Below, piece after piece: positions 3,917-52,510 of a stretch of 64,000 nucleotides of DNA; position 1 is the stretch's first letter; every line of letters starts with the position of its first letter. The position numbers were made by a program, and so were the translations under genes. Location of the stretch: positions 1-64,000 of the forward strand of contig NIVC01000497.1 of assembly GCA_002269645.1 (NCBI GenBank), written 5' to 3'. Source of the stretch: Macrostomum lignano (Eukaryota). The notes beneath the pieces are model-generated. The model was given only the letters and a program-made list of their open reading frames with translations, was not told the origin of the DNA and did not search any database.

Positions 3917-4039
3917 CTGGAAATTACGTGTAAAAAAACACTTTAGTAGGATTCTTAGAAACTGAAAAGTAAATTCAACACATTCTAGAAACTAAAAAGT
4001 ACATTCTACAAACTGAGTCGAAAAGCATTATCTACACAC

Positions 4040-4270
4040 TATGCGACTATCAGATGAAAAGTACATTCTACATACCACAAGATAAAAGTACATTAATAGA
4101 TACCATCACTCTACACACTCATGAGATGAAAAGTACACTACAGTCTACATACTCCATGAGATTAAAAGTACACTCTCACTCTATAAGATGAAAAGTACAC
4201 TCTACACATTCTGAGATGAAAAGTACACTCTACACATTCTATGAGAGTAAAAAGTACATTCTACACATCC
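4040..4270. repeat. Degenerate ~30-bp repeat (GATGAAAAGTACACTCTACAC...)
   Basis: About 7 imperfect copies. Confidence 0.8.
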
Positions 4271-4408
4271 TATAAACTTCTTTATTCCCGCTGTTTGCTG
4301 CCTGGAGTTCAATCTGAAAGGCAAAATGATGATAAGAAATATTGAAATAATTTGAACCGATATCTAGTATAATGAGACATGTTTTCTCAAAACTGATCAA
4401 ACACGCAC

Positions 4409-4505
4409 TCAGAGAGCTGGGTTAATTTCAAATAAACCGCGAAAGCACAAAACACTTTTTTAAAGAATTTGCTACAATCCGGTCTCAAATGTTCAACTTC
4501 ATCAT
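4409..4505 (-). ncRNA. Box C/D snoRNA A1, predicted 28S Cm guide (SNORD35/snR69-type target)
   Basis: Minus strand ATGATGA...AACCCAGCTC-T-CTGA; guide complementary to 28S GAGCUGGGUU. Confidence 0.85.
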
Positions 4506-4693
4506 GTGTTTAGAACGTGAAATGCTTAATAACTAAATATATATAGATAGTTTCGTAATACTTACTTTATAACTTGGAACAGAAGACCGAAAATTTTACA
4601 AGGGAAATCTGAAATAACAAAATTTTTGACGAAAAGTTAAACATTCTAAGAAATCCAATAGGTCTTAAAATAATAATATAAAATCAAAGAGTC

Positions 4694-4795
4694 TCAGAGA
4701 GCTGGGGTTTAATTGCAATTTTTAGCTTTTGGATAAACAAATAGGCTTAATATTTGTCTAGCACTAAAGCAGTTCAAATGTTCAATTGTCATCAT
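4694..4795 (-). ncRNA. Box C/D snoRNA A2 (28S Cm guide family)
   Basis: ATGATGA...TTGAACATTTGA...CCCAGCTC-T-CTGA. Confidence 0.8.
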
Positions 4796-5442
4796 ATTGT
4801 TTTTGTGCAAAAGTAACGTTTTAAAGTGAATCGCACGACAGCCCCTGAACTATTCAATTTTCGTGCACAAACCGCAGGATGGGCCACTCAGCACATTTGC
4901 GTGCAAGCTACTTTCAGTTCAGTAGTAAGTAAGTAGTAAGTAGGAAGTTTATTGGCTCAGTCTTACCCCTCCTTAAGAGCGTAATCCTTCCAACGGCGCC
5001 TTTTCACACTAACCCCCCGCCCGCCCCAATTTTCATTGATTTCTCGGAATTCCAGCCTAAAGCTGCCATGTACATTCAGTAGACTGGCTAATGTACATTA
5101 TTGCTGAACCAATTAGCAAGCTTGTGGGCTTCTAATCTTATCGAAGTTATTTTAGCTGCCTTTATTTTTATAAAATAGCTTATGTATTCTTCTCTACTAC
5201 TGTAGTGAAAGTAGAAAGCTGTTTTGCTAAGCATTCAAGCGGCTTTTTGAATCTTCTTAATACCAAAAACATGGAGTTTTTACAGTATTAAATTACGAGC
5301 GTACTTTCCAAGTTATTAGTATGTCACTTACTTTAACTGTTGAGATCAGTTTCCATCTAAAATTGGATGTTAAAATTACTTGTTAAAAAACACAAACTTT
5401 GACGCGAAAAGATAAAAATAAAAATGAATGAGTAGACAATTT

Positions 5443-5514
5443 TCAGTCTCATTAAATCAGCTTTCGAATGATCATCAGAGATTAAATCACTCAACTATGT
5501 AAATCTTTCATCAT
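5443..5514 (-). ncRNA. Box C/D snoRNA B1, predicted 18S Am99/Am100 guide (SNORD57/snR51-type target)
   Basis: ATGATGA...AGCTGATTTAATGAG-A-CTGA; guide complementary to 18S CUCAUUAAAUCAG. Confidence 0.9.
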
Positions 5515-5708
5515 TTTCAACCATTTAATAACTCAATTTTTTTCATGATTAAAAAATCATTTTTTACTTACTGATATTATCTTTAAATTCCAATTTTCGA
5601 CTTCAGCTTCAATTAATTAGTTCTAAAAGAAATAAAGAAAAAATATCATGAGAAAATGTACGAGAAATGTAGATATTATTAAGTAATGTTATCGCAGAGT
5701 GCAAAATA

Positions 5709-5777
5709 TCAGTCTCATTAAATCAGCTTTAGTGTAAGGTCACGGTTGTGATCAAATATTTAATAAAGTATCATCAT
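5709..5777 (-). ncRNA. Box C/D snoRNA B2 (18S Am99/100 guide family)
   Basis: ATGATGA C box, invariant guide, CTGA D box. Confidence 0.9.
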
Positions 5778-5959
5778 ATTGATATTGGGTTTTGATATTT
5801 AAATAAATTATGAACTTACTTAATTGTTACAAGAGCAATCGAGAAACAAATAAGGCTCCATGTGCGATCTGAAAAATAAACAGCCCTGTGTATTTGGTAT
5901 ATCAAATTTAATTTAAGTATTTTAAATTATTTTAAAAGTTTTATAATACTGTATAATTC

Positions 5960-6044
5960 TCAGAGAGCTCGGGTTTATATCAAAGATAAAAGTACACCAT
6001 TCGCTTGTACGATGAACTTTAGTCAACTGTTCGATTTTCATCAT
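5960..6044 (-). ncRNA. Box C/D snoRNA A3 (28S Cm family, guide with a 1-nt interruption)
   Basis: ATGATGA...AAACCCGAGCTC-T-CTGA. Confidence 0.7.
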
Positions 6045-6254
6045 ATTTTTACGTTTAATGAAGTGAAAAATATATAACGAAATTAAACATGAATAAGAGC
6101 TATTGCTTACACTTTAGCCAATTTCCAATCAAATTTGAGTGTTTTCAGCAAGTCTAAAAAATAGAAATGTTTGTTTATTAAGATCAAATTATTTTGGTTA
6201 CGAAAAGTGCATGTAGCCAAATCAAAAGTACAAAAATATAAGTTCAACGAAAGT

Positions 6255-6322
6255 TCAGAGAGCTGGGGTTAATATCAAATAGTCGGATGGAATCCTGCAT
6301 TCAAATGTTCAAAGGTCATCAT
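6255..6322 (-). ncRNA. Box C/D snoRNA A4 (28S Cm family)
   Basis: ATGATGA...TTGAACATTTGA...CCCAGCTC-T-CTGA. Confidence 0.8.
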
Positions 6323-6519
6323 ATTTGGAAAAATATCGTAGTTAAAAATACAACGAAAAGTATGATCGAACTAACTACTTACAGTAGATCAAATTTATTG
6401 ACTTTCGCAGAATCTTCTCGAAATGAACACTGAGGTCTGCAATAGTAAAAAAAGGAATAGTTCAGTGGCAACGATATTAACAACTTCCAACTCCTAATCT
6501 AAGCTCGTATAAAGAATTG

Positions 6520-6583
6520 TCAGTCTCATTAAATCAGCTTTTGTGTTAATCACAAAAATATTCATGAAATATAAATTCATCCT
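6520..6583 (-). ncRNA. Box C/D snoRNA B3 (18S Am99/100 family, variant C box AGGATGA)
   Basis: Invariant guide and D box; C box has one mismatch. Confidence 0.8.
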
Positions 6584-6767
6584 AAAAATGTTTTAAAAAT
6601 AAAATGAGTACTACTATTTCACACTTGCATTCTTACCTAGTCGATGTCATGAACCATGGTAATTTTTTCTCGATTTCAATGCCTGCAAATGCAAAGGCGA
6701 GACTGTAATGCTCCAAATTTCAAATAGAACAAAATTCACATTCAAAAACCAAATATAAAATCACTAT

Positions 6768-6851
6768 TCAGAGAGCTGGGTGTTATTATCACTTAGAAAA
6801 CAATGAGCCACTAAAAGTGTCCATTGCTATCGAATGTTCGAATGTCATCAC
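6768..6851 (-). ncRNA. Box C/D snoRNA A5 (28S Cm family)
   Basis: GTGATGA...TCGAACATTCGA...ACCCAGCTC-T-CTGA. Confidence 0.8.
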
Positions 6852-7037
6852 TTTTAATACTGAACGGAGTACAGTAGCTTCCAAAAATAACACGGGGCAA
6901 GCTTACCATTGGCAATGAAATAGAAGTACTTCATCAACAAATCTAAAATTGGAACGAATTGCAGAGCTGTAGCGTAACAGCATGTGAATTTTGAATAAAT
7001 ACCTGCGAAAAAATTTTACGAACACAGAAATGCTATT

Positions 7038-7105
7038 TCAGTCTCATTAAATCAGCTTTGGATTGCAATCACATTGCGATCATTTATTGTTTAAAAATTC
7101 ATCAT
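7038..7105 (-). ncRNA. Box C/D snoRNA B4 (18S Am99/100 family)
   Basis: ATGATGA, invariant guide, CTGA. Confidence 0.9.
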
Positions 7106-7272
7106 CAGCAAATCTACGAGTACATTAAATTAAACTTTACCAGAAAAAAACGTATTAGAGTTTCAGATACGCAAAGGGAGAAATTAACCCCGTACGTATT
7201 ATGGGGAATGGAGGTTGTTGTCACTTTAAAACCAGTCACAAGCTATATGCGGATAAAGTAACGCTAGTGGGC

Positions 7273-7723
7273 TAGGGATTGCAATCCCGGGATCCCGGGA
7301 TTTGGGACCCCAAATCCCGAAACTAATTTTTGTTAATATTTTTTACAAAAAGTGCTGTAATATAAACATAATTAGGCCCACAATTAGTTTATTATACTGC
7401 GCTAATTTCCGTTAATTGCCTCACGTCGCGTGGCACCTTTTTAAACCCCGCATCATAGATTTAAATGTGAAATTAATTCCAATTTAAATTTTGATATAAT
7501 TTGCTTTTTTACTACTAATTAGTACATTTATACTACTTACTTTAATGGGTCACAAGATAATGCTGTTTATCATCTACAAATAGATCATTATCTCTATAAC
7601 AATAAAAAAGTAAGCAAAAAAGCGTTTAGCGCATATTTTGCCTTAAAATTTCAACCTAAAAGCATAAAAATCTGTATTATTCTGATCCCGGGATCATAAA
7701 AATCCGGGATTTTGCAATCCCTA
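7273..7723. mobile_element. Non-autonomous TIR element (MITE, possibly hAT-like) inside a snoRNA host intron
   Basis: TAGGGATTGCAA...TTGCAATCCCTA termini with subterminal ATCCCGGGAT palindromes and an AT-rich interior; TSD unclear. Confidence 0.7.
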
Positions 7724-8259
7724 GGGCACAAAATAACCTAAAAATGGGGTGGGGCTTGGCTTGGGGCGACCAACCAAAAAATCGATAACAACACTGACTC
7801 ACTCCGTGCCTTGGGGGCTGTTAGCTGGTGGGGCTAATGGTGGGGGCAGATAAGATAGGGAATTTGGTGGGGTAAGACGCCAGCGAGAAAATCGATAAAG
7901 CTCTCTTACCCATCCCGATTCCACACTCGCTTGCTACAGTAAAATGGGGTTAGCGGAGTGAGGTTGGGTTTAGATAGGGACGGTCGACCATAAAATCGAT
8001 AAATCTTTTACTCACTCACGACTCACAAGGCCTCAGTGGAAAACTGATGCAAAAAGTTAAATAATTAATAACACAGTTAATAGGAAATAAATTACACTTA
8101 CCCTATGACGTGCAATTTAAGCAGTAACTTGATCTTTTACACACAAACTGGTCTTAAAACTGCGACCTGTAACAAAAATAATGGCTGTGCATGAAATTTC
8201 GATTAGCTAATTTCATTAAAATAGGTGTATTAGTACTAGGTTGGGTTCTAAACATTGCT

Positions 8260-8354
8260 TCAGAGAGCTGGGTGTTAATATCAATTCGTAAAACTAATAA
8301 GCCACTTGTTAGGTGTTTATTAATAATTACGTTCTAATGTTCAAGTGTCATCAT
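8260..8354 (-). ncRNA. Box C/D snoRNA A6 (28S Cm family)
   Basis: ATGATGA...TTGAACAT...ACCCAGCTC-T-CTGA. Confidence 0.8.
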
Positions 8355-8554
8355 GTGCTTAAATATCAAACAGTAATTGCTACTGAAGAACAGTAATAAA
8401 AATGAAAAAACAAGCTTACCAGATATCAGTTCCATTACAGCCGAAATCCAATCCTGGAAAAATGAAATAAAATATAAAGCTATTGATTGTTTTAAGTAAA
8501 TGTAATTCAAGAAAATGAGTTCTGTTTGAACAAATAATTGCTACTGATAAGCAT

Positions 8555-8625
8555 TCAGTCTCATTAAATCAGCTTCAGGTTACACTCATAATATTTGAGG
8601 TCATTTATATAGAGATTGTCATCAA
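8555..8625 (-). ncRNA. Box C/D snoRNA B5 (18S Am99/100 family)
   Basis: TTGATGA C box, invariant guide, CTGA. Confidence 0.85.
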
Positions 8626-8822
8626 AGCTGTATTCATAAAATCCTTTGTTCTACTAAATTTAGTAACTAATAATGCAATTGACTTACCTATCTTCTTTAA
8701 CACATGAACCGATAATACACTGTAGAGGTCCTAAAACAAAAGGAGCAGGTTGATAGGAAGATCGATATTAAAAATAGAAGCTACAAACTATATTTATAAT
8801 AAAGTTTCCTGGCTCTAAATAT

Positions 8823-8896
8823 TCAGTCTCATTAAATCAGCTTTAGATTGCAAAAAGTCACGATTCTATTTTTGCATACAATAATTTTATCATCAT
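8823..8896 (-). ncRNA. Box C/D snoRNA B6 (18S Am99/100 family)
   Basis: ATGATGA, invariant guide, CTGA. Confidence 0.9.
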
Positions 8897-8963
8897 TAAT
8901 ATAGGCCAATAACTGTAACATTAAAAGTGGGAATATTAACAAACCTCATCTGGTATTGATAGT

Positions 8964-9061
8964 TCAGACGGTAATTCTTGTTTAATTTCAAGGTACTCAC
9001 GAGCAACTATAAACAAATATAGTCACTCTCTAGACTCAAATTAGACATTCGAGGTCATCAT
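8964..9061 (-). ncRNA. Box C/D snoRNA C1, predicted 18S Um guide (yeast U578/human U627; snR77/SNORD65-type target)
   Basis: ATGATGA...GAATTACCG-T-CTGA; 9-nt complement to 18S CGGUAAUUC; the D-5 position falls on the U of GCGGUAAUU. Confidence 0.65.
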
Positions 9062-9844
9062 TGATAAATCTCTTACTAATAAAAGTTTACATCTAAGCAT
9101 ACAAAACTACTCACAGTTTTAAACAGTCAATCGACGTCTTTTAGCAGCAGTAGACAGACAGATCCAGCCGGTTGAAATTAAACTAATTGAGTCACCATAG
9201 CTATAACAACTAAATACTGCACTGAATATTTCATGAAAAAAATAAATACAAGACTTGTACTACAATTTTAATTAAAAAATGTTTTTTGGTACTTAAATAC
9301 AATAAACTGTGTCAACACAGTAAAAAAAACTACAATAGGTTTGTAACAAACGAATAAAAGAGATATTTATTAAATACATATACAGACATTACAACTTACA
9401 AGTATCTGATATATAAAAAATGTTATGCGTCACAGCCAGTGGACACATGCTACCTATAAGTTCTCTTACTCTTAAGAACATTACCTAGAAAAAATGTAAG
9501 TACTTTAGTCTTGTAAAATGAAACAACACAAAAATAACAATGGACGGAATGGTGGAATGTCTAATGTATAAGATACTTCAAATTGTTTTTAAATACAGTT
9601 GAATTTAATATTCACAACTTAGGTTCGCAACGATTGATTCGGTGCTATAATCTAAAGATATCAGATATCTGCAGGTTTCTAACTAATCAGCTGCGCAAGA
9701 CAATACAATTTATTATGTACGAGTAATTCATGATATTTAGTCAGTTAACTATTTCGTTCTACAATCGATCAAATTTAAAACTTTTAATCTCGCAGCTCAA
9801 GCAACTGGAATTACTGGATATCTGGAAGGCTGTCCCACCAACTG

Positions 9845-10620
9845 AGGATCTGGGATGCTGGTCCAGAAAATGAGGATCTGGGATGCTGGTCCAGAAAATG
9901 AGGATCTGGGATGCTGGTCCAGAAAATGAGGATCTGGGATGCTGGTCCAGAAAATGAGGATCTGGGATGCTGGTCCAGAAAATGAGGATCTGGGATGCTG
10001 GTCCAGAAAATGAGGATCTGGGATGCTGGTCCAGAAAATGAGGATCTGGGATGCTGGTCCAGAAAATGAGGATCTGGGATGCTGGTCCAGAAAATGAGGA
10101 TCTGGGATGCTGGTCCAGAAAATGAGGATCTGGGATGCTGGTCCAGAAAATGAGGATCTGGGATGCTGGTCCAGAAAATGAGGATCTGGGATGCTGGTCC
10201 AGAAAATGAGGATCTGGGATGCTGGTCCAGAAAATGAGGATCTGGGATGCTGGTCCAGAAAATGAGGATCTGGGATGCTGGTCCAGAAAATGAGGATCTG
10301 GGATGCTGGTCCAGAAAATGAGGATCTGGGATGCTGGTCCAGAAAATGAGGATCTGGGATGCTGGTCCAGAAAATGAGGATCTGGGATGCTGGTCCAGAA
10401 AATGAGGATCTGGGATGCTGGTCCAGAAAATGAGGATCTGGGATGCTGGTCCAGAAAATGAGGATCTGGGATGCTGGTCCAGAAAATGAGGATCTGGGAT
10501 GCTGGTCCAGAAAATTAGGATCTGGGATGCTGGTCCAGAAAAAGAGGATCTGGTGGCTGGCCCAGCAACTGAGGATCTGGGAGGCTAGTCCAGAAAATGA
10601 GGATCTGGTGGCTGACCCAG
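9845..10620. repeat. 28-bp minisatellite (GAGGATCTGGGATGCTGGTCCAGAAAAT)n
   Basis: About 25 near-identical copies. Confidence 0.97.
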
Positions 10621-10765
10621 CCGCTGAGGATCTGCAAGATATCAGATATCAGATAGGTGGTTCAACAATTTCAGAATTCAGAATAACTCTGATTAAAAAC
10701 CGAAATAGAACAAAACTCAATATTTTAATTAAAAGCAGTCATAATTAGCACAGTAAAGAAGTCAA

Positions 10766-11479
10766 TCAAGCAATGGTGGTTTGGCCGGCGTTCCTCCTTC
10801 GCAACTCGGTACCCTCGAAGGCATTGTTATAATAGACGTAGCCGTCTTCCCTGGACTCGCCAGACTGATCCAATCCGTCAGCATTGAAATACTCCATCTT
10901 GTGGTGAAACTTCAATGCCTGAACAGTTTGAAACACTTTGATAGTGTACAGGCCCATGATCACTTCTAGCAGTACGAATATGAATTCCACAGAGTGCATG
11001 ACGATCTCGAAGGGATTCACCAGCAGATAATAGTTGAATAGAAAGAAGCAGATAGCTGGCAGCTGTATAATAGTCGTGATAAGCCAACTACCGGCTAAAT
11101 CGGCAATATTCTCCGACAGATTGCCGAAGTAGCCAATGTAAAGCCGGATGAATTCCAGGATGCAATACAAGCAGAACAGGGCGATCAATATTGGCTGATA
11201 GATGTAATTCAGCTGGCTGTACTTGTCAACTATGGACAATAGGAAGCCGACAATCCAGAATGGAGCAAAGAATGCGTTGAAATAATACACAATCTGCAAT
11301 GGCAGGAAGGTGGCGTACTCAAGCCCTGTGCGGCCAGTCTGTAAGCGGATCTTCTCCAAGTCCTGCTTGCGAACTGGGAACATTTGATTGGTCATGCGGC
11401 CCATTGCTGACCGCCAGGTGCCTTGCAGGCGTTGCACAGCCTGGCTGGCTTGCTGCTGCATGCTGTTCATTGTGTTCAT
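10766..11479 (-). CDS. TMEM17: Transmembrane protein 17 (ciliary transition zone, TMEM17/216 family), single coding exon, 237 aa
   Basis: LPLQIVYYFNAFFAPFW...IRLYIGYFGNLSENIADLAGSWLITTIIQLP matches the TMEM17 motif RLYLGYxGNLxExVxxLAGFW; four hydrophobic segments. Confidence 0.9.
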   Translation of the reverse strand: MNTMNSMQQQASQAVQRLQGTWRSAMGRMTNQMFPVRKQDLEKIRLQTGRTGLEYATFLPLQIVYYFNAFFAPFWIVGFLLSIVDKYSQLNYIYQPILIALFCLYCILEFIRLYIGYFGNLSENIADLAGSWLITTIIQLPAICFFLFNYYLLVNPFEIVMHSVEFIFVLLEVIMGLYTIKVFQTVQALKFHHKMEYFNADGLDQSGESREDGYVYYNNAFEGTELRRRNAGQTTIA

Positions 11480-13938: not shown

Positions 13939-16900
13939 CTACAGGCCCTGACTCTTATCCGTGGCGCAGCGAAGCACCGCGGCCTGGCCTCGATGAGCCA
14001 CAGTAAAAGTGCACGGACCCTGAAGCCAGGGCTCACCATCCACCTGCACCGGGACGCTGCCGGACCGCAGTACAATCTGCAGATTCGAACCCTGGCCCAG
14101 CCGTATAGCCGGGGCTAATCCCAACTGCAGCTGGGCCATGTGGAAGCTGGAATGCAGCCCCATCAATTCGAATCGGCCGTCGCCGTGCGATTGCGGCCGG
14201 AAATGCAGCTGAGCATCCGGCTGAGCCGCCGAGGAGGCTGGACTCGACATCTTCGCAGACGAGGAATCGTCCGACACGGTCGGAGAAGCCGACGATCCCC
14301 AAGGTCTGCAGCCGGAGCCCCAGGAGGCGATGTTCAGCACGACCAGGCCTTCCAATTCTGGCAGGTTCAATGGTCGGCCGTCGAGAATCACGGTCAATCG
14401 GCGGTGCAGATAGCGGCAGACGCGCTCCCATAGGTCTCGGGTGCCGTAGCCAAAATACCTGGGGATAATTTAAATAGACTACTATTAGTTAGATACAGTC
14501 ACTCGTTAGTCAGTTAGATAAACACAAGCATTAGTGAATTAGATAGACAATCATTAGTCAATTAGATACAGTCACTCATTAGTCAGTTAGATAAACACAA
14601 ACATTAGTGAATTAGATAGACAATCATTAGTCAATTAGATACAGTCACTCATTAGTCAGTTATACTTAGACACTCATTAGTCAATTAAGTACACGCATTG
14701 GTCAATTAGATAAAGACAATCATTAGTGAATTAGATGGACAATCATTAGTGAATTAGATGGACAATCATTAGTGAATTAGATGGACAATCATTAGTGAAT
14801 TAGATGGACAATCATTAGTGAATTAGAATATTAGATGGACAATCATTAGTGAATTAGATAAAGACAATCATTAGTGAATTAGATGGACAATCATTAGTGA
14901 ATTAGATGGACAATCATTAGTGAATTAGATGGACAATTATTAGTGAATTAGATGGACAATCATTTGTGAATTAGATGGACAATCATTAGTGAATTAGATG
15001 GACAATCATTAGTGAATTAGATGGACAATCATTAGTGAATTAGATGGACAATCATTAGTGAATTAGATGGACAATTATTTGTGAATTAGATGGACAATCA
15101 TTTGTGAATTAGATGGACAATCATTAGTGAATTAGATGGACAATCATTAGTGAATTAGATGGACAATCATTTGTGAATTAGATGGACAATCATTAGTGAA
15201 GTAGATACAGACAATCATTAGTGAAGTAGATACAGACAATCATTAGTGAAGTAGATACAGACAATCATTAGTGAAGTAGATACAGACAATCATTAGTGAA
15301 GTAGATACAGACAATCATTAGTGAAGTAGATACAGACAATCATTAGTGAATTAGATGGACAATCATTTGTGAATTAGATGGACAATCATTAGTGAAGTAG
15401 ATACAGACAATCATTAGTGAAGTAGATACAGACAATCATTAGTTAGTTAGATACAGTTACTCATTAGCCAATTGGATACAATCAATCATTAGCCAATTAG
15501 ACGCAGGCACTCATTAGACACATACAGTCACCTATTAGTCAATTAGATACAGTTAATGTCTCACCAAAGCTTATTAATCATCCGACTACCAGTTAGCGCA
15601 GGCAGCGATCGCCTGGCGGAGTCGAAATTCAAGGCAACCAGAGCGTCAACTCCTAGACTGAAGTAATTACTCATAGTAAGCCGTTTCGATCGAGACAACA
15701 GCAGCGATCGGCTGGGCTTCACAGATACAAGCCAACGATCTAATCGATCTACGCTAGCGTTAGCCAAGTTGCTTAACAACGCATCGACGCTATCTAGGTC
15801 GTCGGCGCTCGAACCCGGTCCCCAGCCTAGCACGCGGGACAGATCGTTGCCGGTGCCCAGCGGGAAAATTGCTAACGGAGGCGGCGGACTCAATCCCAGC
15901 TCTTCGATGGCGGACAGCACCCAGCCGACGGTGCCGTCGCCGCCGCACACAAGCAGCCGAGCTGTGACACCTTTGGGTAGGAGGCGGCACCAGCCCAGGG
16001 CCACTTTGGGCGGCACTTCGGACAGGTCCAGCACCTGCGAGAGAAGGTAAGTTTAGAGATTGATTATCATTGTTCAGGGAAATGAAGGACAGTGCTTTAT
16101 AGTGACATGCTTCAGGGCGATTATTCCTGGAAATTGAAGGCCGATTCTTTATGGAATTGAAGACCGACTCTTAATGAAATGATGGAATTAAGGCCGATTC
16201 TTGATAGAATTCACGGTTGATTCTTGGTGGAATTGAAGGCCGATTCATGATGGAATTAAAGGCCGATCTTTGAGGGAATTGAAGGCCGATTCTTGATGGA
16301 ATTGAAGGCCGATTTTTTATGGAATTGAAGGCTGATTCTTTATGGAATTGAAGGCTGATTCTTGATGGAATTAAAGGCCGAATCTTGATGGAATTGACGG
16401 CCGATTCTTGATCGAATTAAAGGCCGATTTCTGACTGAAGGCCGATTCTTGATGGAATTGAAGGCCGATTCTTGATGGAATCGAAGGCAGATTCTTGATG
16501 GAATTGAAGGCCGATTCTTGATAGAATTCAAGGCCGATTCTTGGTGGAATTGAAGGCCGATTCATGATGGAATTAAAGGCCGATCCTTGAGGGAATTGAA
16601 GGCCGATTCTTGATGGAATTGAAGGCCGATTCTTGATAGAATTCACGGTTGATTCTTGGTGGAATCGAAGGCAGATTCTTGATGGAATTGAAGGCCGATT
16701 CTTGATAGAATTCAAGGCCGATTCTTGGTGGAATTGAAGGCCGATTCATGATGGAATTAAAGGCCGATCCTTGAGGGAATTGAAGGCCGATTCTTGATGG
16801 AATTGAAGACCGATTCTTGATAGAATTCACGGTTGATTCTTGGTGGAATCGAAGGCAGATTCTTGATGGAATTGAAGGCCGATTCTTGATAGAATTCAAG

Positions 16901-19515
16901 GCCGATTCTTGGTGGAATTGAAGGCCGATTCATGATGGAATTAAAGGCCGATCCTTGAGGGAATTGAAGGCCGATTCTTGATGGAATTGAAGGCCGATTT
17001 TTTATGGAATTGAAGGCTGATTCTTTATGGAATTGAAGGCTGATTCTTGATGGAATTAAAGGCCGAATCTTGATGGAATTGACGGCCGATTCTTGATCGA
17101 ATTAAAGGCCGATTTCTGACTGAAGGCCGATTCTTGATGGAATTGAAGGCCGATTCTTAATGGAATCGAAGGCAGATTCTTGATGGAATTGAAGGCCGAT
17201 TCTTGATAGAATTCAAGGCCGATTCTTGGTGGAATTGAAGGCCGATTCATGATGGAATTAAAGGCCGATCCTTGAGGGAATTGAAGGCCGATTCTTGATG
17301 GAATTGAAGGCCGATTCTTGATGGAATTGAAGGCCGATTCTTGATGGAATTGAAGGCCGATTCTTAATAGAATTCAAGGCCGATTCTTGGTGGAATTGAA
17401 GGCCGATTCATGATGGAATTAAAGGCCGATTCTTGATGGAATTGAAGGCCGATTCTTGATGGAATTGAAGGCCGATTCTTGATGGAATTGAAGGCCGATT
17501 CTTAATAGAATTCAAGGCCGATTCTTGGTGGAATTGAAGGCCGATTCATGATGGAATTAAAGGCCGATCCTTGAGGGAATTGAAGGCCGATTCTTGATGC
17601 AATTGAAGGCCGATTCTTGATGGAATCGAAGGCCGATTCTTGATGGAATTGAAGGCCGATTCTTGATAGAATTCAAGGCCGATTCTTGGTGGAATTGAAG
17701 GCCGATTTATGATGGAATTAAAGGCCGATCCTTGAGGGAATTGAAGGCCGATTCTTGATGGAATTGAAGGCCGATTTTTTATGGAATTGAAGGCTGATTC
17801 TTGATGGAATTAAAGGCCGATTCTTGATGGAATTGACGGCCGATTCTTGATCGAATTAAAGGCCGGTTTCTGACTGAAGGCCGATTCTTGATGGAATTGA
17901 AGGCCGATTCTTGATGGAATCGAAGGCCGATTCTTGATGGAATTGAAGGCCGATTTTTTATGGAATTGAAGGCCGATTTCTGACTGAAGGCCGATTCTTG
18001 ATGGAATTGAAGGCCGATTCTTGATGGAATTGAAGGCCGATTCTTGATGGAATTAAAGGCCGATTCTTGATGGAATTCAAGGCCGATTCTTGATGGAATT
18101 GAAGGCCGATTTCTGACTGAAGGCCGATTCTTGATGGAATTAAAGGCCGATTTCTGACTGAAGGCCGATTCTTGATGGAATTGAAGGCCGATTTTTTAGG
18201 AAATTTTAAAGCGATTTTATCGGTCTTAAAGGGTGGTGTTTTAAGAATTTTTTTAATCCCTAATTGGCAATTTGTAAGTAAAAAAATCAGGTAGCAACAA
18301 TCCAGTTGGCCGGAGCCTCTCACCTGAGCTGGGTTCAGCACCGCTCGGAATCGCTGCAGCACTTGGTCACCTTCACCACCGCCGCTGTGCCGATTGGCCA
18401 GCACAATCAGGGGCCGCCAAACGGCGGGCAGCCGGGGAGCCCGCACCATCGACAGCAGACTGGGCTGCCGACGGCGCGTCGGCTTCGACAGTTGCACGCA
18501 GTGCGGCGGCACCACCGCATCGGCGTAGCGACCGAAATCGCACAGCCTTGGAAGCTGGCGCCGCTGCGAAGGGTCAGCATTGTTGATTTTGTTGGCTTCG
18601 CCGCCTTCTCTTGTAGAAGTACTGGGAATGCGAATTTAAATGTCATATTACTTAAAAAAGCTAATTTTTTAGACTACTAATAGTAGAAATTAGTGCAGGA
18701 TTGAATTTTTCGCTTGGCGCTACCCGACTTAAACGCTAACGAGACCAAGAAGCGACCCAGAGTCACTTGCGTTGCCCACGGAGTCGTTGCAGGTAACACA
18801 GGTAAAATATAAAAAATTGACTCTCTAAAACACTCTAGACGGCTCTAAAACGAGATGTCACGGTGAGGGCCCAAAAAAGTCGTCAAAGAGTTGCCAAAAG
18901 AGTCGCTAGTGAGTTGTTTGCAATCACGGTTTCCTTCTCTTCCTACTGTACTTTAAAACAGTTGTCCTTGGGCCTCACTCACGCTCCATTGGCAGTCAAT
19001 TCGGCGCAGTCTGGATGCACGCAGCGCTGGCACCAGGCGCACCGCAGGTCGCACAATCGGCCAGCTTCGCCGCAGGCATCACGACAGACGCAGCACATTG
19101 AATAGGCTGGCAGATTGCCTTCAACCCAATGATGCGGTGTGCCTTCTATGTCAGCATCCGATGATGGCGAGGATGACGAAGGTATCAAAGCGACAGGCTT
19201 GCAGGGCACAGCGCGGACTGCAACGGACAGTTCCGAATCGGAAACGCACAAGCCGCAGTGTTGACAGACGGCGCCTTCGAGCATAGCGGCTCCGCCGGAG
19301 ACTCCACAATAGGCTGGCCGATCGAAGTGACCGATTCGACGCCACCGGTGGCCGTTGTTGCTAGGAGCGGCGCCGTCATCCGGGGCCGGCACACTGGGAT
19401 CCGGTAGGCGACGGTGCCGCAGCTTTCTCAGGTAGATTAATAAGTAGGTGAGCAATAGAAGGCCGGCAGCGTATAGTGCCTGCCACGCCCAGTGGGGGGC
19501 CTGCAATAGAGTCAT
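13939..19515 (-). CDS. DGKE: Diacylglycerol kinase epsilon-like; exons 18983-19515, 18324-18546, 15565-16034, 13939-14458
   Basis: N-terminal TM segment, two C1 domains (HHWVEGNLP...C..C...CAWCQRCVHPDC), catalytic NRHSGGGEG, CGGDGTVGWV and PLGTGNDLSRVLGWG, and accessory LPELEGLVVLNIASWGSGCRPW...VPVQVDGEPW. GT-AG junctions are phase-consistent. Confidence 0.93.
14480..15550. repeat. 23-bp minisatellite (TTAGTGAATTAGATGGACAATCA)n, DGKE intron
   Basis: Direct observation. Confidence 0.95.
16130..18200. repeat. 23-bp minisatellite (GGAATTGAAGGCCGATTCTTGAT)n with higher-order variant blocks, DGKE intron
   Basis: About 85 copies; variant patterns recur. Confidence 0.97.
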
Positions 19516-19544
19516 GAGAAGCGACTGCACTAAGATATAACTGA

Positions 19545-40500: not shown

Positions 40501-43500
40501 AATTAATTCATTAATTCATAGCTAGGTAACCACTTTGGTAGCCAGTTTGCAGGTGCGGGGGGGGGGCTTTGGTTACCGCCGCAGTCAAACCATTCCGTTG
40601 ACTCCTGATAATTGTCTTAAATCGGGCAACAAGTTCACACAGGGTGTTCACCGACCCTGACTTTCTCATTGTCACCCCTGTCGTCTCATCTTTCTTATAC
40701 GAGGGGTAGTCAAAAAGTAATGATAAATATTATTTTTCAAAGGACAGAAAGCCATGTCAAGGCTTATTTCTCCACAAAATCTCCATCCAGCTCTAAGCAC
40801 TTCTCCATACAATGGCGCCATCGCTCCAGCCCCGCCCTGAAGAAGCCAGGTGGCTGGGATGCAAGCCACTGCTGGGCTGCTGTTTTCGCCTCCTCCTTGC
40901 CCGAATTTCACACTCCTTTGATTGCTTCCTTTAACTTTGGAAACAGAAATAAATCTGATGGAGCAAGATCAGAGCTGCAGGGAGGTTGGGAGAGAATTTC
41001 CCAGCGAAATTCGCGCCGAACGCCTCGGCAGAGCCGTGAAGTGTGTGCCCGGGCTTTGTCGTGGTGGAAGAGGATGCGCCGGTGGAGCTTACCAGGTCGC
41101 TTCCTGGCTAATTCTGTGCGCAGCTTTTGCAGCACACCTTCGTAGTAGGCCCCAGTGATTGTGCGCTGCGATTCCAGGAAGTCCACTAAGATGACTCCTT
41201 CTGCATCCCAGAAAATGGTTGCCATGACCTTGGCCATAAAGCGGTCGGCCCGGACTTCTTTGGCCCGACAGATCCTTGAGGCAGCTACTCTTTTGACTGG
41301 ATTTTCTACTCTGGATCGTACTGGTAGATCCAGGTCTCATCACCAGTCACCAACCGTTCAAAAAAAATCGTTGGCGTCAGTGTCAAGGCGGTTGAGCAGG
41401 TTCGCTGCGCACTCGCTGCGTTGGGCTTTGTGCTCCGGGCGCAACGCCCGTGGCACCCAACGGGCAATTAGCTTGCTGAAGCCCAGATCGTCTGTCAGGA
41501 TCAAATAAACACTGCTATGGGAGATGCCCAGTTCTTCAACAATAGCCTCAATGGTCACACGCCGGTCCTGCTCAACTTTTCGACGCACAGCAGTAACCAT
41601 CTCTTCTGTGCGCGCTGTGCTCGGTCATCCACTGCGGTCAGCGTCTTCAATGGCCTCCCGACCGGCCTTAAACTCTTGGATCCACCGATAACCGGTGGGA
41701 TTCGGTGGGGCAGCATCCCCGAAGACCTTCTGTAAAGCCTCGAGGATAGCAGCCGGCTTCCAATCCAACCGCGTTAAAAATTTCACATTGGAACGCGCTT
41801 CAAGTTTGAAATTTTCCATTGCTGAAAAGGGGTACTGCGTTTGTACTTCGGCCATGGTTGAACTATACATCCAAACAGAGCGAAAAAGTATTACAACAAG
41901 AAACAAAATATGCTTATTCAAATGAAAAAAGTCTGGGTTCAATATTTATTTTCTGCTTTGTGCAGGAGCAAAATTATCATTACTTTTTTACTTTAAACCC
42001 CTTGGATACAAGACCTCATGTCAAGAATGGCACAAATTAATGTGGCAACGCACAGAGGATTCTACCAGCGTATTGTTAAAGAAAGACGTCAGCCAGCAGC
42101 GGTATCAAAGCTAAAAAGCTCAGACTTACGTTTCAATATATTTGCTCACCTGCTGAGCTCAACGGCGAAAAATTATTGTGAAGCAGATCCATATTTTTAA
42201 AAGACGACAACAGGGAACTCTTACTTCCGCTAGATCTGGCACAAAAGGTTCTTGCACAAATACAATGGAAACACCTGATTCTTTTCAGACGGCTCAATTC
42301 TAAGAAAGTAGCGAGGCTATTGTTAATTTGAGTTAGGAGCGGACCGTCTCTTATCATAGCTAGATCATATTCAGCAGGTGTTGGTTTGTGAACTGCAGCA
42401 GGCACAGCAAATACTTACTTACAACTTACTATTGACGGGGGGCGCAGGCGCCGCGAATAGGCCGCGAGGCCCCTATCGCAACCCCAAGGTAAACAAGACC
42501 ACAAGGATTAACCCTGGGGGTGCGCCCAACCCCCGCCGGTAGTCGGCCGGTTCGCAGAGGAGGCATCGGCGACCCTCATCCGGCCGGTATCCCGGACGAA
42601 GGCGCGAAGGTCACGGATGTGGTCCGGTGTGGTCAACTCGTCTATCCGCTGGGGGTGGCCGAGGTATTTGTGCCGCGCCTTATTGAAGTAAGGGCAGAAG
42701 GTGACGTGATGCTCCGCGGTCTCCTCTCCTATGCCACAGGAAGGACAGGTGGGAGGGCAACCAGTTTGCAACGAGATGTCTCTGGAAGACCGAGGTGCGG
42801 AGATTTCCGCGGGGTTCGCGGTAAGGTCAACCTCCATGTTGGAGGATTGGGGGGTTGACGGACCCCCGGTCGCGGGAATTGTCGGCTCCCGAGCCGTGTC
42901 GGGTGGTTTTGAATTATCCATGCAGAGTAGGCTGGAATGGAGAAAACTGAAATGTAGAAAAAGGGGTGGGTAACCGCGCGGGGGCTGGATCCCCCAGCCA
43001 ACTCCAAGGAGCTACCCTCTGCCACGGTAAACAGCAGAGAAGCTTTGGGTTGCCGACTTACCCCAGGATTGCACCCAGGCGAGGCTCCGGCAGGTCCCCA
43101 GTCCACACTCTGCAAGATCACGGGGCGGGAGGCCGGCTGCAGGTTTGGGACACAAACGCCAGGTCGGGTTGACAGCCGGCGCCCGAGCCCTCCCCCGCAG
43201 GAGCGGCCCTCGAGAACCCGTGTAGTACCAGTTGCAACTATGGGCTGTCGGTGGGTAGTTGGCGCTTAGCCAGCGGCCAACTACTTGGCAGCCACCTGCC
43301 CTGCAAAAAAGCAGCAGGGGGGGGGGGGTCCGTCCTCCACCAGCAGACCAGAACAAGGAAGCTGGTCGCTTCCACGCCAGGCCTGAGCGAAAGAGGAGGG
43401 GGAAAAACCTCAAAAACGAAAAGCTGGCGGATGTCACAGAGTCCCTCGGTTTAAGCTGCCATTGAATTATGGCACAGCAAATAAGTCAGTATTCAAATGG

Positions 43501-52420: not shown

Positions 52421-52510
52421 CAACGTTCGAATCATATTTATGCTCAGTCAATTATATGTTAAACTTTGGAGTCGTAAAACAGCGCAATTGAATTCGATCA
52501 ACAGCTGCGC

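What the first reader, a model, noticed from the sequence alone, without database searches (positions are those of the whole stretch)
4270..9200. Non-coding micro-exon host gene with one snoRNA per intron at a fixed distance from the 3' splice site
Seen: every snoRNA lies between a canonical donor (GTAAG/GTGAG) and a pyrimidine-rich YAG acceptor on the minus strand. In the 12 introns, the D box nearest the acceptor lies 83-101 nt upstream of it (95, 85, 86, 86, 91, 101, 83, 85, 95, 93, 101, 92). Internal exons are 25-65 nt and AT-rich. Exon 8102-8166 has stops in all three frames, and AATAAA lies in the last exon. Established: splicing-coupled C/D snoRNP assembly favours a defined distance to the branch point/3' splice site, and vertebrate GAS5/UHG and Drosophila UHG hosts share this architecture. 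Inference: a dedicated lncRNA snoRNA host, likely missed by protein annotation.
Basis: partly seen in the sequence, partly recalled or inferred. Interest (0 to 1): 0.85.

Follow-up and report, generated by a model that had tools for sequence, protein, structure and literature searches.

The report
Flatworm non-coding snoRNA host gene
This is an unannotated gene of about 5 kb in the flatworm Macrostomum lignano whose 13 tiny non-coding exons appear to serve only to be spliced, so that its 12 introns release 13 box C/D snoRNAs that guide ribosomal RNA methylation; it is a textbook UHG/GAS5-type design, real but ordinary in kind.

Summary
The window is Macrostomum lignano contig NIVC01000497.1. 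On the minus strand, 9200-4270 holds 13 exons of 25-86 nt and 12 GTRAG...YAG introns.

The introns carry 13 box C/D snoRNAs:
- six SNORD57/snR51-like copies, with a 13-15 bp guide to 18S;
- six snR69/snoR69Y-like copies, with a guide to LSU GAGCUGGG;
- one extra snoRNA in intron 1, so "one per intron" fails once.

The layout is not chance. It is present in 11 of 11 spacers, against at most 3 in 2000 shuffles and none elsewhere in the 64 kb. Two further copies of the locus in the same assembly (99% and 94% identical) keep the architecture. Between copies the snoRNAs diverge 2.7%, exons 4.4% and introns about 6%. Exon lengths differ by non-triplet indels, and no ORF is conserved.

Three caveats apply:
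- No transcript data were available.
- The promoter is unknown, and read-through from TMEM17 upstream is not excluded.
- The 5' flank is as constant as the 3' flank.

Verdict: a new member of a known kind, first noted for a flatworm in the searched literature. Interest is modest.

The parts
9115..9200 (-). Exon 1; the 5' end is not defined. A YAG sits immediately upstream at 9201.
   Evidence: Donor act|GTGAGT at 9114. The exon is conserved in the two other copies apart from an 18-nt indel in L002.
8959..9065 (-). snoA, an extra box C/D snoRNA in intron 1. C box ATGATGA, D box CTGA at 8967-8964, guide AAGAATTACCGT.
   Evidence: Boxes read. A 64-nt run is identical in the 94% copy. The guide pairs 10 bp with 18S GCGGTAATTC in real rDNA contigs. 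Only weak Rfam resemblances were found.
8818..8900 (-). S57-1, SNORD57/snR51-like C/D snoRNA in intron 1 (8731-9114).
   Evidence: Guide CTGATTTAATGAGA|CTGA. Sub-threshold Rfam SNORD57 match. D-box end to AG is 92 nt.
8688..8730 (-). Exon 2 (43 nt).
   Evidence: Identical in all three copies.
8550..8629 (-). S57-2, SNORD57-like snoRNA in intron 2 (8454-8687).
   Evidence: D-box end to AG is 101 nt. Its D box is deleted in the L002 copy.
8420..8453 (-). Exon 3 (34 nt).
8255..8358 (-). F2-1, snR69/snoR69Y-like C/D snoRNA in intron 3 (8167-8419).
   Evidence: Guide ACCCAGCTCT|CTGA. D-box end to AG is 93 nt.
8102..8166 (-). Exon 4 (65 nt), with stops in all three frames.
   Evidence: Identical in all three copies.
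7275..7730 (.). 456-nt element with terminal inverted repeats, inserted in intron 4 upstream of the snoRNA. It is not part of the gene's function.
   Evidence: Inverted repeat at 7267-7284 / 7712-7729. Absent from L002 and present in L123.
7033..7109 (-). S57-3, SNORD57-like snoRNA in intron 4 (6943-8101).
   Evidence: D-box end to AG is 95 nt despite a 1159-nt intron.
6907..6942 (-). Exon 5 (36 nt).
   Evidence: It is 39 nt in L002.
6763..6855 (-). F2-2 snoRNA in intron 5 (6683-6906).
   Evidence: D-box end to AG is 85 nt.
6637..6682 (-). Exon 6 (46 nt).
   Evidence: It is 59 nt in L002.
6515..6587 (-). S57-4 snoRNA in intron 6 (6437-6636); the C box is the variant AGGATGA.
   Evidence: D-box end to AG is 83 nt. 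Identical in L002.
6383..6436 (-). Exon 7 (54 nt).
6250..6326 (-). F2-3 snoRNA in intron 7 (6154-6382).
   Evidence: D-box end to AG is 101 nt. Identical in all three copies.
6111..6153 (-). Exon 8 (43 nt).
   Evidence: It is 41 nt in L002.
5955..6048 (-). F2-4 snoRNA in intron 8 (5869-6110). Its guide carries a C->G change (CCGAGCTCT) in the window copy.
   Evidence: D-box end to AG is 91 nt.
5820..5868 (-). Exon 9 (49 nt).
   Evidence: It is 44 nt in L002. An 8-nt deletion removes the donor in L123.
5704..5781 (-). S57-5 snoRNA in intron 9 (5623-5819).
   Evidence: Best Rfam SNORD57 match, 28 bits, E = 0.011. D-box end to AG is 86 nt.
5572..5622 (-). Exon 10 (51 nt), with stops in all three frames.
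5438..5518 (-). S57-6 snoRNA in intron 10 (5357-5571). Its 5' half weakly resembles snR60/Z15.
   Evidence: D-box end to AG is 86 nt.
5332..5356 (-). Exon 11 (25 nt).
4689..4799 (-). F2-5 snoRNA in intron 11 (4609-5331).
   Evidence: Rfam snoR69Y alignment shares the antisense CCCAGCUCU. D-box end to AG is 85 nt despite a 723-nt intron.
4566..4608 (-). Exon 12 (43 nt).
4404..4509 (-). F2-6 snoRNA in intron 12 (4314-4565).
   Evidence: D-box end to AG is 95 nt.
4270..4313 (-). Last exon (3' end approximate), with the poly(A) signal AATAAA at 4286-4281.
   Evidence: A 79-nt run, 4343-4265, is identical in L002.
9412..9467 (-). Conserved 56-nt block upstream of the gene, ending at a TATA-like TTTTTTATATAT. 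It is a candidate promoter element only.
   Evidence: 100% identical between window and L002 within otherwise 10%-diverged intergenic DNA. No functional test was done.

Best explanation
The region is a Pol II-transcribed, multi-exon, non-protein-coding snoRNA host gene of Macrostomum lignano (minus strand, about 9200 to about 4260).

Its useful products are in the introns:
- six copies of a SNORD57/snR51-type box C/D snoRNA, predicted to guide 2'-O-methylation of the A in 18S GGCUCA*UUAAAUCAG (human A99 / yeast A100);
- six copies of an snR69/snoR69Y-type snoRNA, predicted to guide methylation of the C in LSU GAGC*UGGGUU (yeast C2948 position);
- one further C/D snoRNA in intron 1.

Proposed mechanism:
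1. Each snoRNA sits about 59 nt from the 5' splice site and about 91 nt from the 3' splice site of a short intron.
2. Most lack a stable terminal stem. Core snoRNP proteins would therefore be loaded in a splicing-coupled, position-dependent way (the Hirose-Steitz / IBP160-Aquarius model).
3. After lariat debranching, exonucleases trim back to the protected snoRNP.
4. The 13 micro-exons are ligated into a 0.6-kb polyadenylated RNA with stops in all frames, which is probably a disposable by-product.

Shown here: the anatomy, its non-randomness, the lack of coding capacity, the guide/target complementarity, and stronger constraint on snoRNAs than on exons or introns. Inferred only: transcription, splicing, the assembly mechanism and the fate of the spliced RNA.
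For: - **Organism and annotation.** The window is NIVC01000497.1 of GCA_002269645.1, Macrostomum lignano. No gene is called over the region in any of the three copies.
- **Anatomy.** There are 12 GTRAG donors, 12 pyrimidine-tract YAG acceptors, exons of 25-86 nt and an AATAAA.
- **Non-randomness.** The pattern occurs in 11 of 11 spacers, against at most 3 of 11 in 2000 shuffles and 0 on the other strand. The same geometry occurs nowhere else in the 64 kb.
- **snoRNA identity.**
  - Paralogue alignments conserve only the C box, D'/C' boxes, guide and D box.
  - The SNORD57 model aligns to all six S57 copies, with 21 of the 22 positions AAAACUGAUUUAAUGAGCCUGA identical.
  - The S57 guide forms 13-15 contiguous base pairs with GCTCATTAAATCAG about 1670 nt upstream of the 18S 3' end in real eukaryotic rDNA contigs.
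  - The F2 guide pairs 8-10 bp with LSU GAGCTGGGTT. It carries the same antisense CCCAGCUCU as the Rfam snoR69Y consensus.
- **Non-coding.** The longest spliced ORFs are 50 and 65 aa, with different starts and stops in two copies and no Pfam hit. Exon indels are not multiples of 3.
- **Constraint.** Window versus the 94% copy: snoRNAs 2.7%, exons 4.4%, intron flanks about 6%, intergenic 9-12% substitutions. snoRNA versus intron gives Fisher p = 6e-6 and 4e-5. The same ranking holds against the 99% copy (0.43%, 0.65%, 1.16%; p = 0.03). All 24 splice dinucleotides are kept in L002, where the distances are 82-99 nt.
- **Position.** The 3' flank is 83-101 nt in all 12 introns and the 5' flank 43-67 nt in 9. 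The C-to-D span varies more, 63-101 nt. All three large insertions, including a 456-nt TIR element absent from L002, lie 5' of the snoRNA.
- **Terminal stems.** They are no stronger than in shuffles for 11 of 13 snoRNAs.
- **Literature.** Human C/D snoRNAs lie about 50 nt upstream of the branch point. Assembly depends on splicing unless long external stems are present (PMC5519232). Drosophila copies lie about 70 nt upstream of the 3' splice site (PMC1821038).
Against: - No RNA evidence of any kind could be obtained: no junction reads, no small-RNA reads, no poly(A) or TSS data.
- The transcription start is unknown, and the proposed exon 1 starts right after a YAG.
- No Rfam family reaches its gathering score (best 28 bits against 47 for SNORD57; 19.4 against 45 for snoR69Y).
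- The F2 guide is short (8-10 bp) and its second conserved element (TYGAACAK) has no convincing target.
- The target of snoA is ambiguous.
- Intron 1 has two snoRNAs, and snoA lies 233 nt from the acceptor, outside the 'optimal' position.
- Individual copies are decaying. S57-2 lost its D box in L002, S57-1 has a guide insertion in L123, F2-4 has a guide mutation here, and the intron 9 donor is deleted in L123.
- The 3' distance is 10-25 nt longer than the published optimum of about 70 nt.
- Because the units arose by duplication, part of the constancy of distances may be inherited rather than selected.
Confidence: 0.8

Rival explanations
1. The micro-exons are not an autonomous gene. They would be the 3' extension of the upstream protein-coding gene TMEM17 (10766-11479, same strand), or a downstream cistron of a polycistronic unit with it. 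In that case the snoRNAs would be released from 3'-UTR introns or from a trans-spliced downstream RNA.
For: - TMEM17 ends 1.5 kb upstream on the same strand, and this order is kept in all three copies.
- The proposed exon 1 begins directly after ttgttatag| (9201), which is conserved in L002. This could be a cis- or spliced-leader acceptor.
- No promoter could be identified.
- In M. lignano about 39% of genes are trans-spliced and about 7% of transcription units are polycistronic precursors (PMC5730564).
- There is a precedent. Drosophila 'dUhg6' turned out to be 3'-UTR introns of the coding gene mfl, used through alternative poly(A) sites (PMC1821038).
Against: - About 800 nt of a hypervariable 28-nt minisatellite separates the two genes. 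It is about 160 nt in L002.
- AATAAA-like signals lie between the two genes.
- The intergenic stretch diverges 9-12%, against 4% in the exons.
- A fully conserved 56-nt block ending in a TATA-like motif lies at 9467-9412.
- TMEM17 has no ribosome-related function that would parallel known coding hosts.
Confidence: 0.15
2. The snoRNAs are made from a polycistronic precursor by endo- and exonucleolytic processing without splicing, as in plants, trypanosomes or yeast clusters. The splice-site-like motifs would then be coincidental or vestigial.
For: - Tandem multi-copy snoRNA clusters processed without splicing exist in other eukaryotes (general knowledge).
- No junction reads were available here.
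- snoA and S57-1 share one intron only 68 nt apart.
Against: - Splice-site pairs occur in 11 of 11 spacers, against at most 3 of 11 in shuffles and 0 on the opposite strand.
- GTRAG occurs 22 times on the minus strand and 7 on the plus strand.
- All GT/AG dinucleotides are kept in the 94% copy.
- The spacing is strict and terminal stems are absent. Long flanking stems are what splicing-independent assembly normally relies on (PMC5519232).
Confidence: 0.03
3. The array is a decaying, non-functional repeat of snoRNA-derived sequences (pseudogenes), and the functional copies lie elsewhere in the genome.
For: - Several copies carry disabling changes in one or another genomic copy: D-box deletion, guide insertion, guide substitution, and a variant C box AGGATGA.
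- No Rfam gathering score is reached.
Against: - Among six ancient paralogues of each family only the boxes and guides are invariant, while everything else has diverged beyond alignment.
- snoRNAs evolve 2-2.7 times more slowly than flanking intron sequence in two independent comparisons.
- Most copies keep perfect C and D boxes and guides.
- Decay of single copies is expected with six-fold redundancy per locus across three loci.
Confidence: 0.02

Closest known systems
Vertebrate non-coding snoRNA host genes (UHG/SNHG1, GAS5, SNHG5 and others)
   Same: - Multi-exon, spliced RNA with no meaningful ORF.
- Box C/D snoRNAs in successive introns at a preferred distance from the 3' splice site or branch point.
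- The snoRNAs are better conserved than the exons.
   Different: - These genes host different snoRNA species in each intron, whereas this one holds six copies each of two species plus one singleton.
- The vertebrate genes have 5'TOP starts; none is evident at the proposed start.
- The 3' distance is about 80-96 nt here, against about 70-80 nt.
- Expression, polyadenylation and NMD sensitivity are untested here.
Drosophila dUhg genes (non-coding hosts with multiple snoRNA isoforms, one per intron) and the mfl 3'-UTR cluster (formerly dUhg6)
   Same: - Tandemly duplicated isoforms of the same C/D snoRNA, one per short intron at a constant distance from the 3' splice site, separated by short non-coding exons (PMC1821038).
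- Evidently built by repeated unit duplication.
   Different: - Different phylum and different snoRNA families.
- dUhg6 proved to be part of a coding gene, which is the open question here for TMEM17.
- The published Drosophila distance is about 70 nt.
Neurospora crassa UHG-like box C/D snoRNA clusters
   Same: - Non-coding hosts with only short ORFs.
- snoRNA-to-5'-splice-site distances are mainly 41-60 nt and 3' distances are similar to those of animals (PMC2780460). This matches the 43-67 nt seen here.
   Different: - The fungal clusters hold different snoRNAs, and alternative splicing of the host was shown experimentally.
- No experimental data exist here.
SNORD116 / SNORD115 arrays in the mammalian SNURF-SNRPN locus
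   Same: Many tandem copies of the same C/D snoRNA, each in its own intron of a long non-coding host with short repeated exons (from general knowledge, not tested here).
   Different: - Those snoRNAs are orphans, imprinted and brain-specific, and the repeat units, exons included, are still recognisably homologous.
- Here the guides match canonical rRNA sites, and the exons and flanks have diverged beyond recognition.
SNORD57 (human) / snR51 (yeast) and snR69 (yeast) / snoR69Y (plants) snoRNA families
   Same: - The antisense elements match: CUGAUUUAAUGAG-CUGA against the SNORD57 consensus and CCCAGCUCU against the snoR69Y consensus.
- Complementarity to the corresponding universally conserved 18S and LSU sites was verified on rDNA contigs.
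   Different: - Outside the boxes and guide there is no similarity.
- Scores are far below the Rfam gathering thresholds.
- In snoR69Y the element precedes an internal box, whereas here it precedes the terminal D box.

Membership tests
Non-coding snoRNA host gene (UHG/GAS5/dUhg class) | Several snoRNAs, each inside an intron bounded by canonical splice sites (one per intron). | tested here: met
   There are 12 GTRAG...YAG introns, each with a C/D snoRNA, and the layout is non-random. One exception: intron 1 holds two snoRNAs.
Non-coding snoRNA host gene (UHG/GAS5/dUhg class) | The spliced exons lack a long or conserved ORF. | tested here: met
   Stops occur in all frames. The longest ORF is 50 aa in the window and a different 65 aa in L002. 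There are no Pfam hits, and exon indels are not multiples of 3.
Non-coding snoRNA host gene (UHG/GAS5/dUhg class) | snoRNAs are more conserved than exons. | tested here: inconclusive
   Substitutions are 2.7% against 4.4% versus the 94% copy (p = 0.07) and 0.43% against 0.65% versus the 99% copy. The direction is as expected, but only snoRNA versus intron is significant.
Non-coding snoRNA host gene (UHG/GAS5/dUhg class) | A spliced, polyadenylated transcript exists with its own promoter. | not testable with these tools
   No RNA data were reachable. AATAAA is present and conserved. TMEM17 read-through is not excluded.
Non-coding snoRNA host gene (UHG/GAS5/dUhg class) | 5'TOP transcription start (vertebrate and Drosophila hosts). 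| tested here: inconclusive
   There is no pyrimidine tract at 9170-9200. A CTCTTTTATTC tract lies at about 9361-9351, downstream of A/T-rich TATA-like sequence. The start site is unknown.
Box C/D snoRNA | C box RUGAUGA near the 5' end and D box CUGA near the 3' end, 60-110 nt apart. | tested here: met
   All 13 have them. Variants are TTGATGA in S57-2 and AGGATGA in S57-4. Spans are 63-101 nt.
Box C/D snoRNA | A short terminal stem brings the C and D boxes together. | tested here: not met
   Flank duplex energies are no better than shuffles for 11 of 13. Only S57-1 and S57-3 stand out. This is common for intronic animal snoRNAs and is consistent with splicing-dependent assembly.
Box C/D snoRNA | An antisense element of at least 10 nt, ending next to the D or D' box, complementary to rRNA or snRNA. 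| tested here: met
   S57 gives 13-15 bp to 18S. F2 gives 8-10 bp to LSU, which is borderline. snoA gives 10 bp including one G-U to 18S.
SNORD57 (RF00274) | Rfam gathering score of 47 bits. | tested here: not met
   The best score is 28 bits, E = 0.011, and there are no hits at gathering threshold. The guide and D box match the consensus nearly perfectly, so this is a functional equivalent or distant homologue, not a scored member.
snoR69Y (RF01198) / snR69 | Rfam gathering score of 45 bits, and an antisense element to LSU GAGCUGGG. | tested here: inconclusive
   The score is 19.4 bits, below threshold. The antisense CCCAGCUCU is shared, and pairing to the LSU site was verified.
Position-dependent, splicing-coupled C/D snoRNP assembly (Hirose-Steitz rule) | The snoRNA lies about 70-80 nt upstream of the 3' splice site, about 50 nt upstream of the branch point. 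| tested here: inconclusive
   D-box end to AG is 83-101 nt in 12 of 12 introns, that is about 78-96 nt from the likely 3' end. YTRAY motifs lie 24-49 nt from the AG in 7 of 12 introns, which gives about 45-65 nt to a putative branch point. This is close to the rule but longer, and the branch points are not mapped.

The most novel reading that the evidence does not exclude
The host RNA is not transcribed from its own promoter. Instead it is the downstream part of a polycistronic TMEM17 transcription unit, freed by spliced-leader trans-splicing at the YAG at 9201. That would make it a snoRNA host lncRNA matured by SL trans-splicing, a combination not described to my knowledge. A smaller add-on: intron 1, with two snoRNAs 68 nt apart, could yield a short snoRNA-capped 'sno-lncRNA'.
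Probability: 0.12. Interest if true: 0.5.

Novelty: new member of a known kind. Interest (0 to 1): 0.3.

Why it matters
- **Annotation.** It adds a real, unannotated gene and 13 snoRNAs to the annotation of a regeneration and stem-cell model flatworm. With the two paralogous loci that makes 39 snoRNA copies. The GenBank annotation of this genome deliberately omits non-coding transcripts.
- **Phylogenetic reach.** In the full-text library searched, no paper links 'snoRNA host' with flatworms. This would extend the UHG-type design and the position rule for intronic C/D snoRNAs to Platyhelminthes (Spiralia). That supports the idea that splicing-coupled C/D snoRNP assembly is ancestral in animals.
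- **Testable predictions.** It predicts two testable rRNA 2'-O-methylation sites.
- **Natural experiment.** The three copies show which snoRNA copies and splice sites are allowed to decay.
- **Limit.** It does not change any concept; the architecture is textbook.

Tried and rejected
1. **Rfam at gathering thresholds** over the whole window gave nothing. Permissive scans gave only sub-threshold C/D matches.
2. **Transcript evidence** was sought by looking up the 50-aa spliced ORF in the assembly and transcriptome index.
3. **Orthologous loci in other species** were sought through the neighbouring TMEM17 protein. Only M. lignano copies were found at E <= 1e-20. The comparison therefore rests on three within-genome copies (L002 at 94%, L123 at 99%), not on other species.
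4. **Second guide of the F2 family** (TYGAACAK before a TNGA box). No consistent rRNA target was found in four rDNA contigs. The 6-7-nt matches to the LSU A-loop UGUUCA or to 18S GUGUUCAAAG are too short to claim.
5. **S57-6 as a double guide.**
   - The snR60/Z15-like 5' half scores E = 1.7 and has no convincing LSU pairing.
   - The internal GATTTAATCT element that looked like a second 18S guide is not conserved in L002.
   - The idea was rejected.
6. **snoA as a SNORD45 or snR55 relative.** The resemblances are only weak, so it is not claimed.
7. **Extra decayed copies in the long introns 4 and 11.** nhmmer profiles of both families found only the 6 + 6 copies per locus. BLAST found no repeats of the inserted DNA elsewhere in the window.
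8. **The constant 3' distance as a unique signature.** This is weakened, because the 5' flank is equally constant.
9. **5'TOP at 9170-9200.** It is not present.

Full report
**Where the window comes from.** The 237-aa ORF at 10766-11479 (minus strand) is found, exactly, on NIVC01000497.1 of assembly GCA_002269645.1. Window coordinates equal record coordinates. NIVC is the Mlig_3_7 assembly of the free-living flatworm Macrostomum lignano (PMC5730564). The ORF is a TMEM17 homologue, Pfam PF09799. The region in question is an AT-rich island of about 32% GC in a window of 45-50% GC that is full of minisatellites.

**Checking the observation.** I read 9600-4000 on the minus strand and recomputed every number.
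- There are 12 donors, eleven GTAAG and one GTGAG, and 12 YAG acceptors behind T-rich tracts.
- From the last base of the D box to the last base of the intron the distances are 92, 101, 93, 95, 85, 83, 101, 91, 86, 86, 85 and 95 nt in gene order.
- Internal exons are 25-65 nt with GC 0.24-0.41. Exon 8102-8166 has stops in all three frames. AATAAA is at 4286-4281 in the last exon.
- The layout is far from chance. All 11 inter-snoRNA spacers carry a pyrimidine-tract YAG 75-105 nt after the D box, then 20-70 nt, then GTRAG. At most 3 of 11 did so in 2000 dinucleotide-preserving shuffles, and none on the reverse complement.
- A detector for 'donor, then 35-75 nt, then C box ... D box, then 70-105 nt, then acceptor' fired only inside this gene across both strands of the 64 kb.

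Two corrections are needed.
- Intron 1 contains two C/D snoRNAs, 68 nt apart with no exon between them. That makes 13 snoRNAs in 12 introns.
- The 5' flank is as constant (43-67 nt in the nine uninterrupted introns, SD 6.9) as the 3' flank (83-101 nt, SD 5.9). The snoRNA body varies more (63-101 nt, SD 12.5).

**What the intronic RNAs are.** Two families are each present six times. nhmmer profiles find no further copies.

*Family S57.*
- D boxes are at 8826, 8558, 7041, 6523, 5712 and 5446.
- The copies share only the C box and the block AAAGCTGATTTAATGAGACTGA.
- Rfam aligns all six to SNORD57, with that block nearly identical to the family consensus. The scores are only 21-28 bits against a gathering score of 47.

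*Family F2.*
- D boxes are at 8263, 6771, 6258, 5963, 4697 and 4412.
- The copies share the C box, a TYGAACAK-TNGA element, a TGAYA C'-like box and CCCAGCTCT-CTGA.
- The Rfam snoR69Y consensus carries the same antisense, AAUCCCAGCUCU (19.4 bits against 45).

*Target check on real rDNA.* To avoid relying on memory for the targets, I fetched eukaryotic rDNA contigs from metagenomes and scanned them.
- The S57 guide forms 13-15 contiguous pairs with GCTCATTAAATCAG about 1670 nt before the 18S 3' end.
- By the fifth-nucleotide rule (PMC10557570), the target is the A of CUCA*UU. From my own knowledge of rRNA numbering this is human A99 / yeast A100, the SNORD57/snR51 site.
- The F2 guide pairs 8-10 bp with the universally conserved LSU GAGCTGGGTT. 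The predicted target is the C, which is yeast 25S C2948, the snR69 site (numbering from memory).

*The singleton snoA* (9065-8959) has perfect C and D boxes and a guide AAGAATTACCGT. The guide pairs 10 bp with 18S GCGGTAATTC in the 530-loop region. A near-identical GGUAAUUCU motif further 5' in 18S is an alternative target. Rfam gives only weak resemblances. I treat this target as tentative.

**Non-coding nature.** The spliced product is 619 nt with stops in all frames, and the longest ATG ORF is 50 aa. In the unspliced region no ORF exceeds 67 aa. Neither the 50-aa ORF nor the 65-aa ORF of the paralogous copy hits Pfam.

**Paralogous copies as a natural comparison.** The TMEM17 cluster has three members, all from M. 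lignano. The contigs of the other two (L002 and L123) carry the same host gene downstream of TMEM17. L123 is about 99% identical and L002 about 94% identical to the window.
- **L002.** All 12 introns keep GT...YAG, with one donor changed to GTAATC. The distances are 82-99 nt and AATAAA is kept. Exon lengths differ by +18, +3, +13, -2 and -5 nt, and the longest ORF changes start and stop.
- **Substitution rates, window versus L002.** snoRNAs 2.7%, exons 4.4%, intron flanks about 6%, intergenic 9-12%. snoRNA versus intron gives p = 6e-6 and 4e-5 in two tallies.
- **Substitution rates, window versus L123.** The same order holds: 0.43%, 0.65% and 1.16% (p = 0.03).
- **Where the constraint lies.** Selection therefore acts on the intronic RNAs. 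The exons behave almost like introns. Conservation of the 48 splice-site bases is only marginally informative at this divergence (about 2.9 changes expected, 0 seen).
- **Single-copy lesions.** S57-2 has lost its D box in L002. S57-1 has a 6-nt duplication in its guide in L123. F2-4 has a guide substitution in the window and L123. An 8-nt deletion removes the intron 9 donor in L123. Such decay is expected when 6 x 3 redundant copies exist. Some indels could instead be long-read assembly errors.

**Mechanism.**
- The introns are compact. Nine are 197-253 nt, whereas the genome average is 1.1-1.4 kb (PMC5730564).
- The snoRNA is held about 59 nt from the donor and about 91 nt from the acceptor.
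- All three large length changes fall on the 5' side: the second snoRNA in intron 1, about 530 nt plus a 456-nt TIR element in intron 4, and about 480 nt in intron 11. The 3' distance stays at 92, 95 and 85 nt. With only three events this asymmetry is suggestive, about p = 0.06 if insertions hit flanks in proportion to length.
- YTRAY motifs lie 24-49 nt from the acceptor in 7 of 12 introns. That puts the snoRNA roughly 45-65 nt upstream of a putative branch point.
- Eleven of 13 snoRNAs have no terminal stem better than shuffled flanks.
- The literature fits this. Human C/D snoRNAs sit about 50 nt upstream of the branch point. IBP160/Aquarius couples core-protein loading to splicing, and only long external stems make assembly independent of splicing (PMC5519232). 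Drosophila copies lie about 70 nt from the 3' splice site (PMC1821038).
- I therefore infer splicing-coupled, position-dependent snoRNP assembly, followed by debranching and exonucleolytic trimming. The spliced exons would be a disposable by-product. The distance here is 10-25 nt longer than the published optimum. Transcription, splicing and assembly are inferred, not shown.

**Rivals.**
- The serious rival is that the exons belong to the TMEM17 transcription unit.
  - *For:* the same strand 1.5 kb upstream, a conserved YAG immediately before 'exon 1', and no identifiable promoter. Trans-splicing and polycistronic precursors are frequent in this species. There is also the precedent of Drosophila dUhg6, which proved to be 3'-UTR introns of mfl.
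  - *Against:* a hypervariable minisatellite and fast-evolving DNA lie between the two genes. A perfectly conserved 56-nt block with a TATA-like end lies at 9467-9412.
  - I give this rival about 0.15.
- Splicing-independent processing and 'dead repeat' explanations are each under 0.05, for the reasons given above.

**Comparison with what is known, and novelty.** This is the UHG/GAS5/dUhg design. It is closest to the Drosophila hosts, which carry several isoforms of one snoRNA one per intron, and to the Neurospora UHG-like clusters, whose 5' distances (41-60 nt) match those here (PMC2780460). Nothing about the mechanism is new. What is new is the instance.
- No gene is annotated at this position.
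- Non-coding transcripts were filtered out of the GenBank annotation.
- The searched library holds no paper combining 'snoRNA host' with 'flatworm', and nothing relevant for Macrostomum plus snoRNA.

I rate it a new member of a known kind, with interest about 0.3.

Noticed in passing
window 7275-7730 (TIRs 7267-7284 / 7712-7729): A 456-nt element with 18-nt terminal inverted repeats (GTGCCCTAGGGATTGCAA) sits in intron 4. It is present in the window and in the 99% copy L123 but absent from the 94% copy L002, so it is a recent MITE-like insertion. It carries an exon-like segment at 7593-7541: a pyrimidine-tract YAG, 53 nt, then GTAAGT. This could be exonised.
   Followed up: partly
window 9850-10640: A 28-nt minisatellite of about 28 copies lies between the TMEM17 stop codon and the host gene. 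At the same place in L002 it is only about 160 nt. L002 has a similar array upstream of TMEM17 (L002 8968-9871).
   Followed up: partly
window 3950-4270: A 28-31-nt minisatellite (unit roughly GAATGTGTAGAGTGTACTTTTCATCTCA) begins directly after the host gene's poly(A) signal. It is also present, with a different copy number, in L002 and L123.
   Followed up: no
window 7745-8030 (intron 4): Three GC-richer repeats of about 105 nt, each containing ...AAAGNTTTATCGATTTT..., lie in intron 4. They are 97.5% conserved in L002, which is more than the surrounding intron. No other copy occurs in the window and their nature is unknown.
   Followed up: partly
window 7142-7236 (intron 4): A possible additional exon: an acceptor-like catatag| at 7237 and a weak donor GTAAAG at 7141 (GTAATG in L002). 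If used, it would give S57-3 a canonical 199-nt intron. The segment also contains a D-box-like CTGA at 7169-7166 and a 59-nt run identical in L002.
   Followed up: partly
L002 12213-12300; L123 12157-12245; window 5970; L123 near window-equivalent 5819-5826: Individual units are decaying in different genomic copies. S57-2 lacks its D box in L002 (8-nt deletion). S57-1 has a TAATGA duplication in its guide in L123. F2-4 has a C->G change in its guide in the window and L123. The intron 9 donor is deleted in L123. Some of these may be long-read assembly indels.
   Followed up: yes
window 6456-6663 and 6196-6333: Runs of 208 nt and 138 nt are 100% identical between the window and the 94% copy L002. 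They span S57-4 with exon 6, and F2-3 with its 3' flank. They are far longer than expected at 6% divergence, which suggests gene conversion between copies or extra constraint.
   Followed up: no
window 5438-5518 (S57-6): This copy has a different 5' half that weakly resembles snR60/Z15 (Rfam E = 1.7) and an internal CTGATGA (adjacent D'/C' boxes). No convincing second target was found. Part of the internal region is not conserved in L002.
   Followed up: yes
window 14000-19530 (-), 52500-54740 (-), 42500-43440 (-): Neighbouring content includes diacylglycerol kinase exons (Pfam DAGK_cat/DAGK_acc) and adenosine deaminase exons (Pfam A_deaminase). An ORF with a CxxC...H zinc-knuckle-like tail, typical of non-LTR retrotransposon 3' ends, has no Pfam hit. 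Much of the rest of the window is minisatellite arrays that create spurious long ORFs in several frames.
   Followed up: partly
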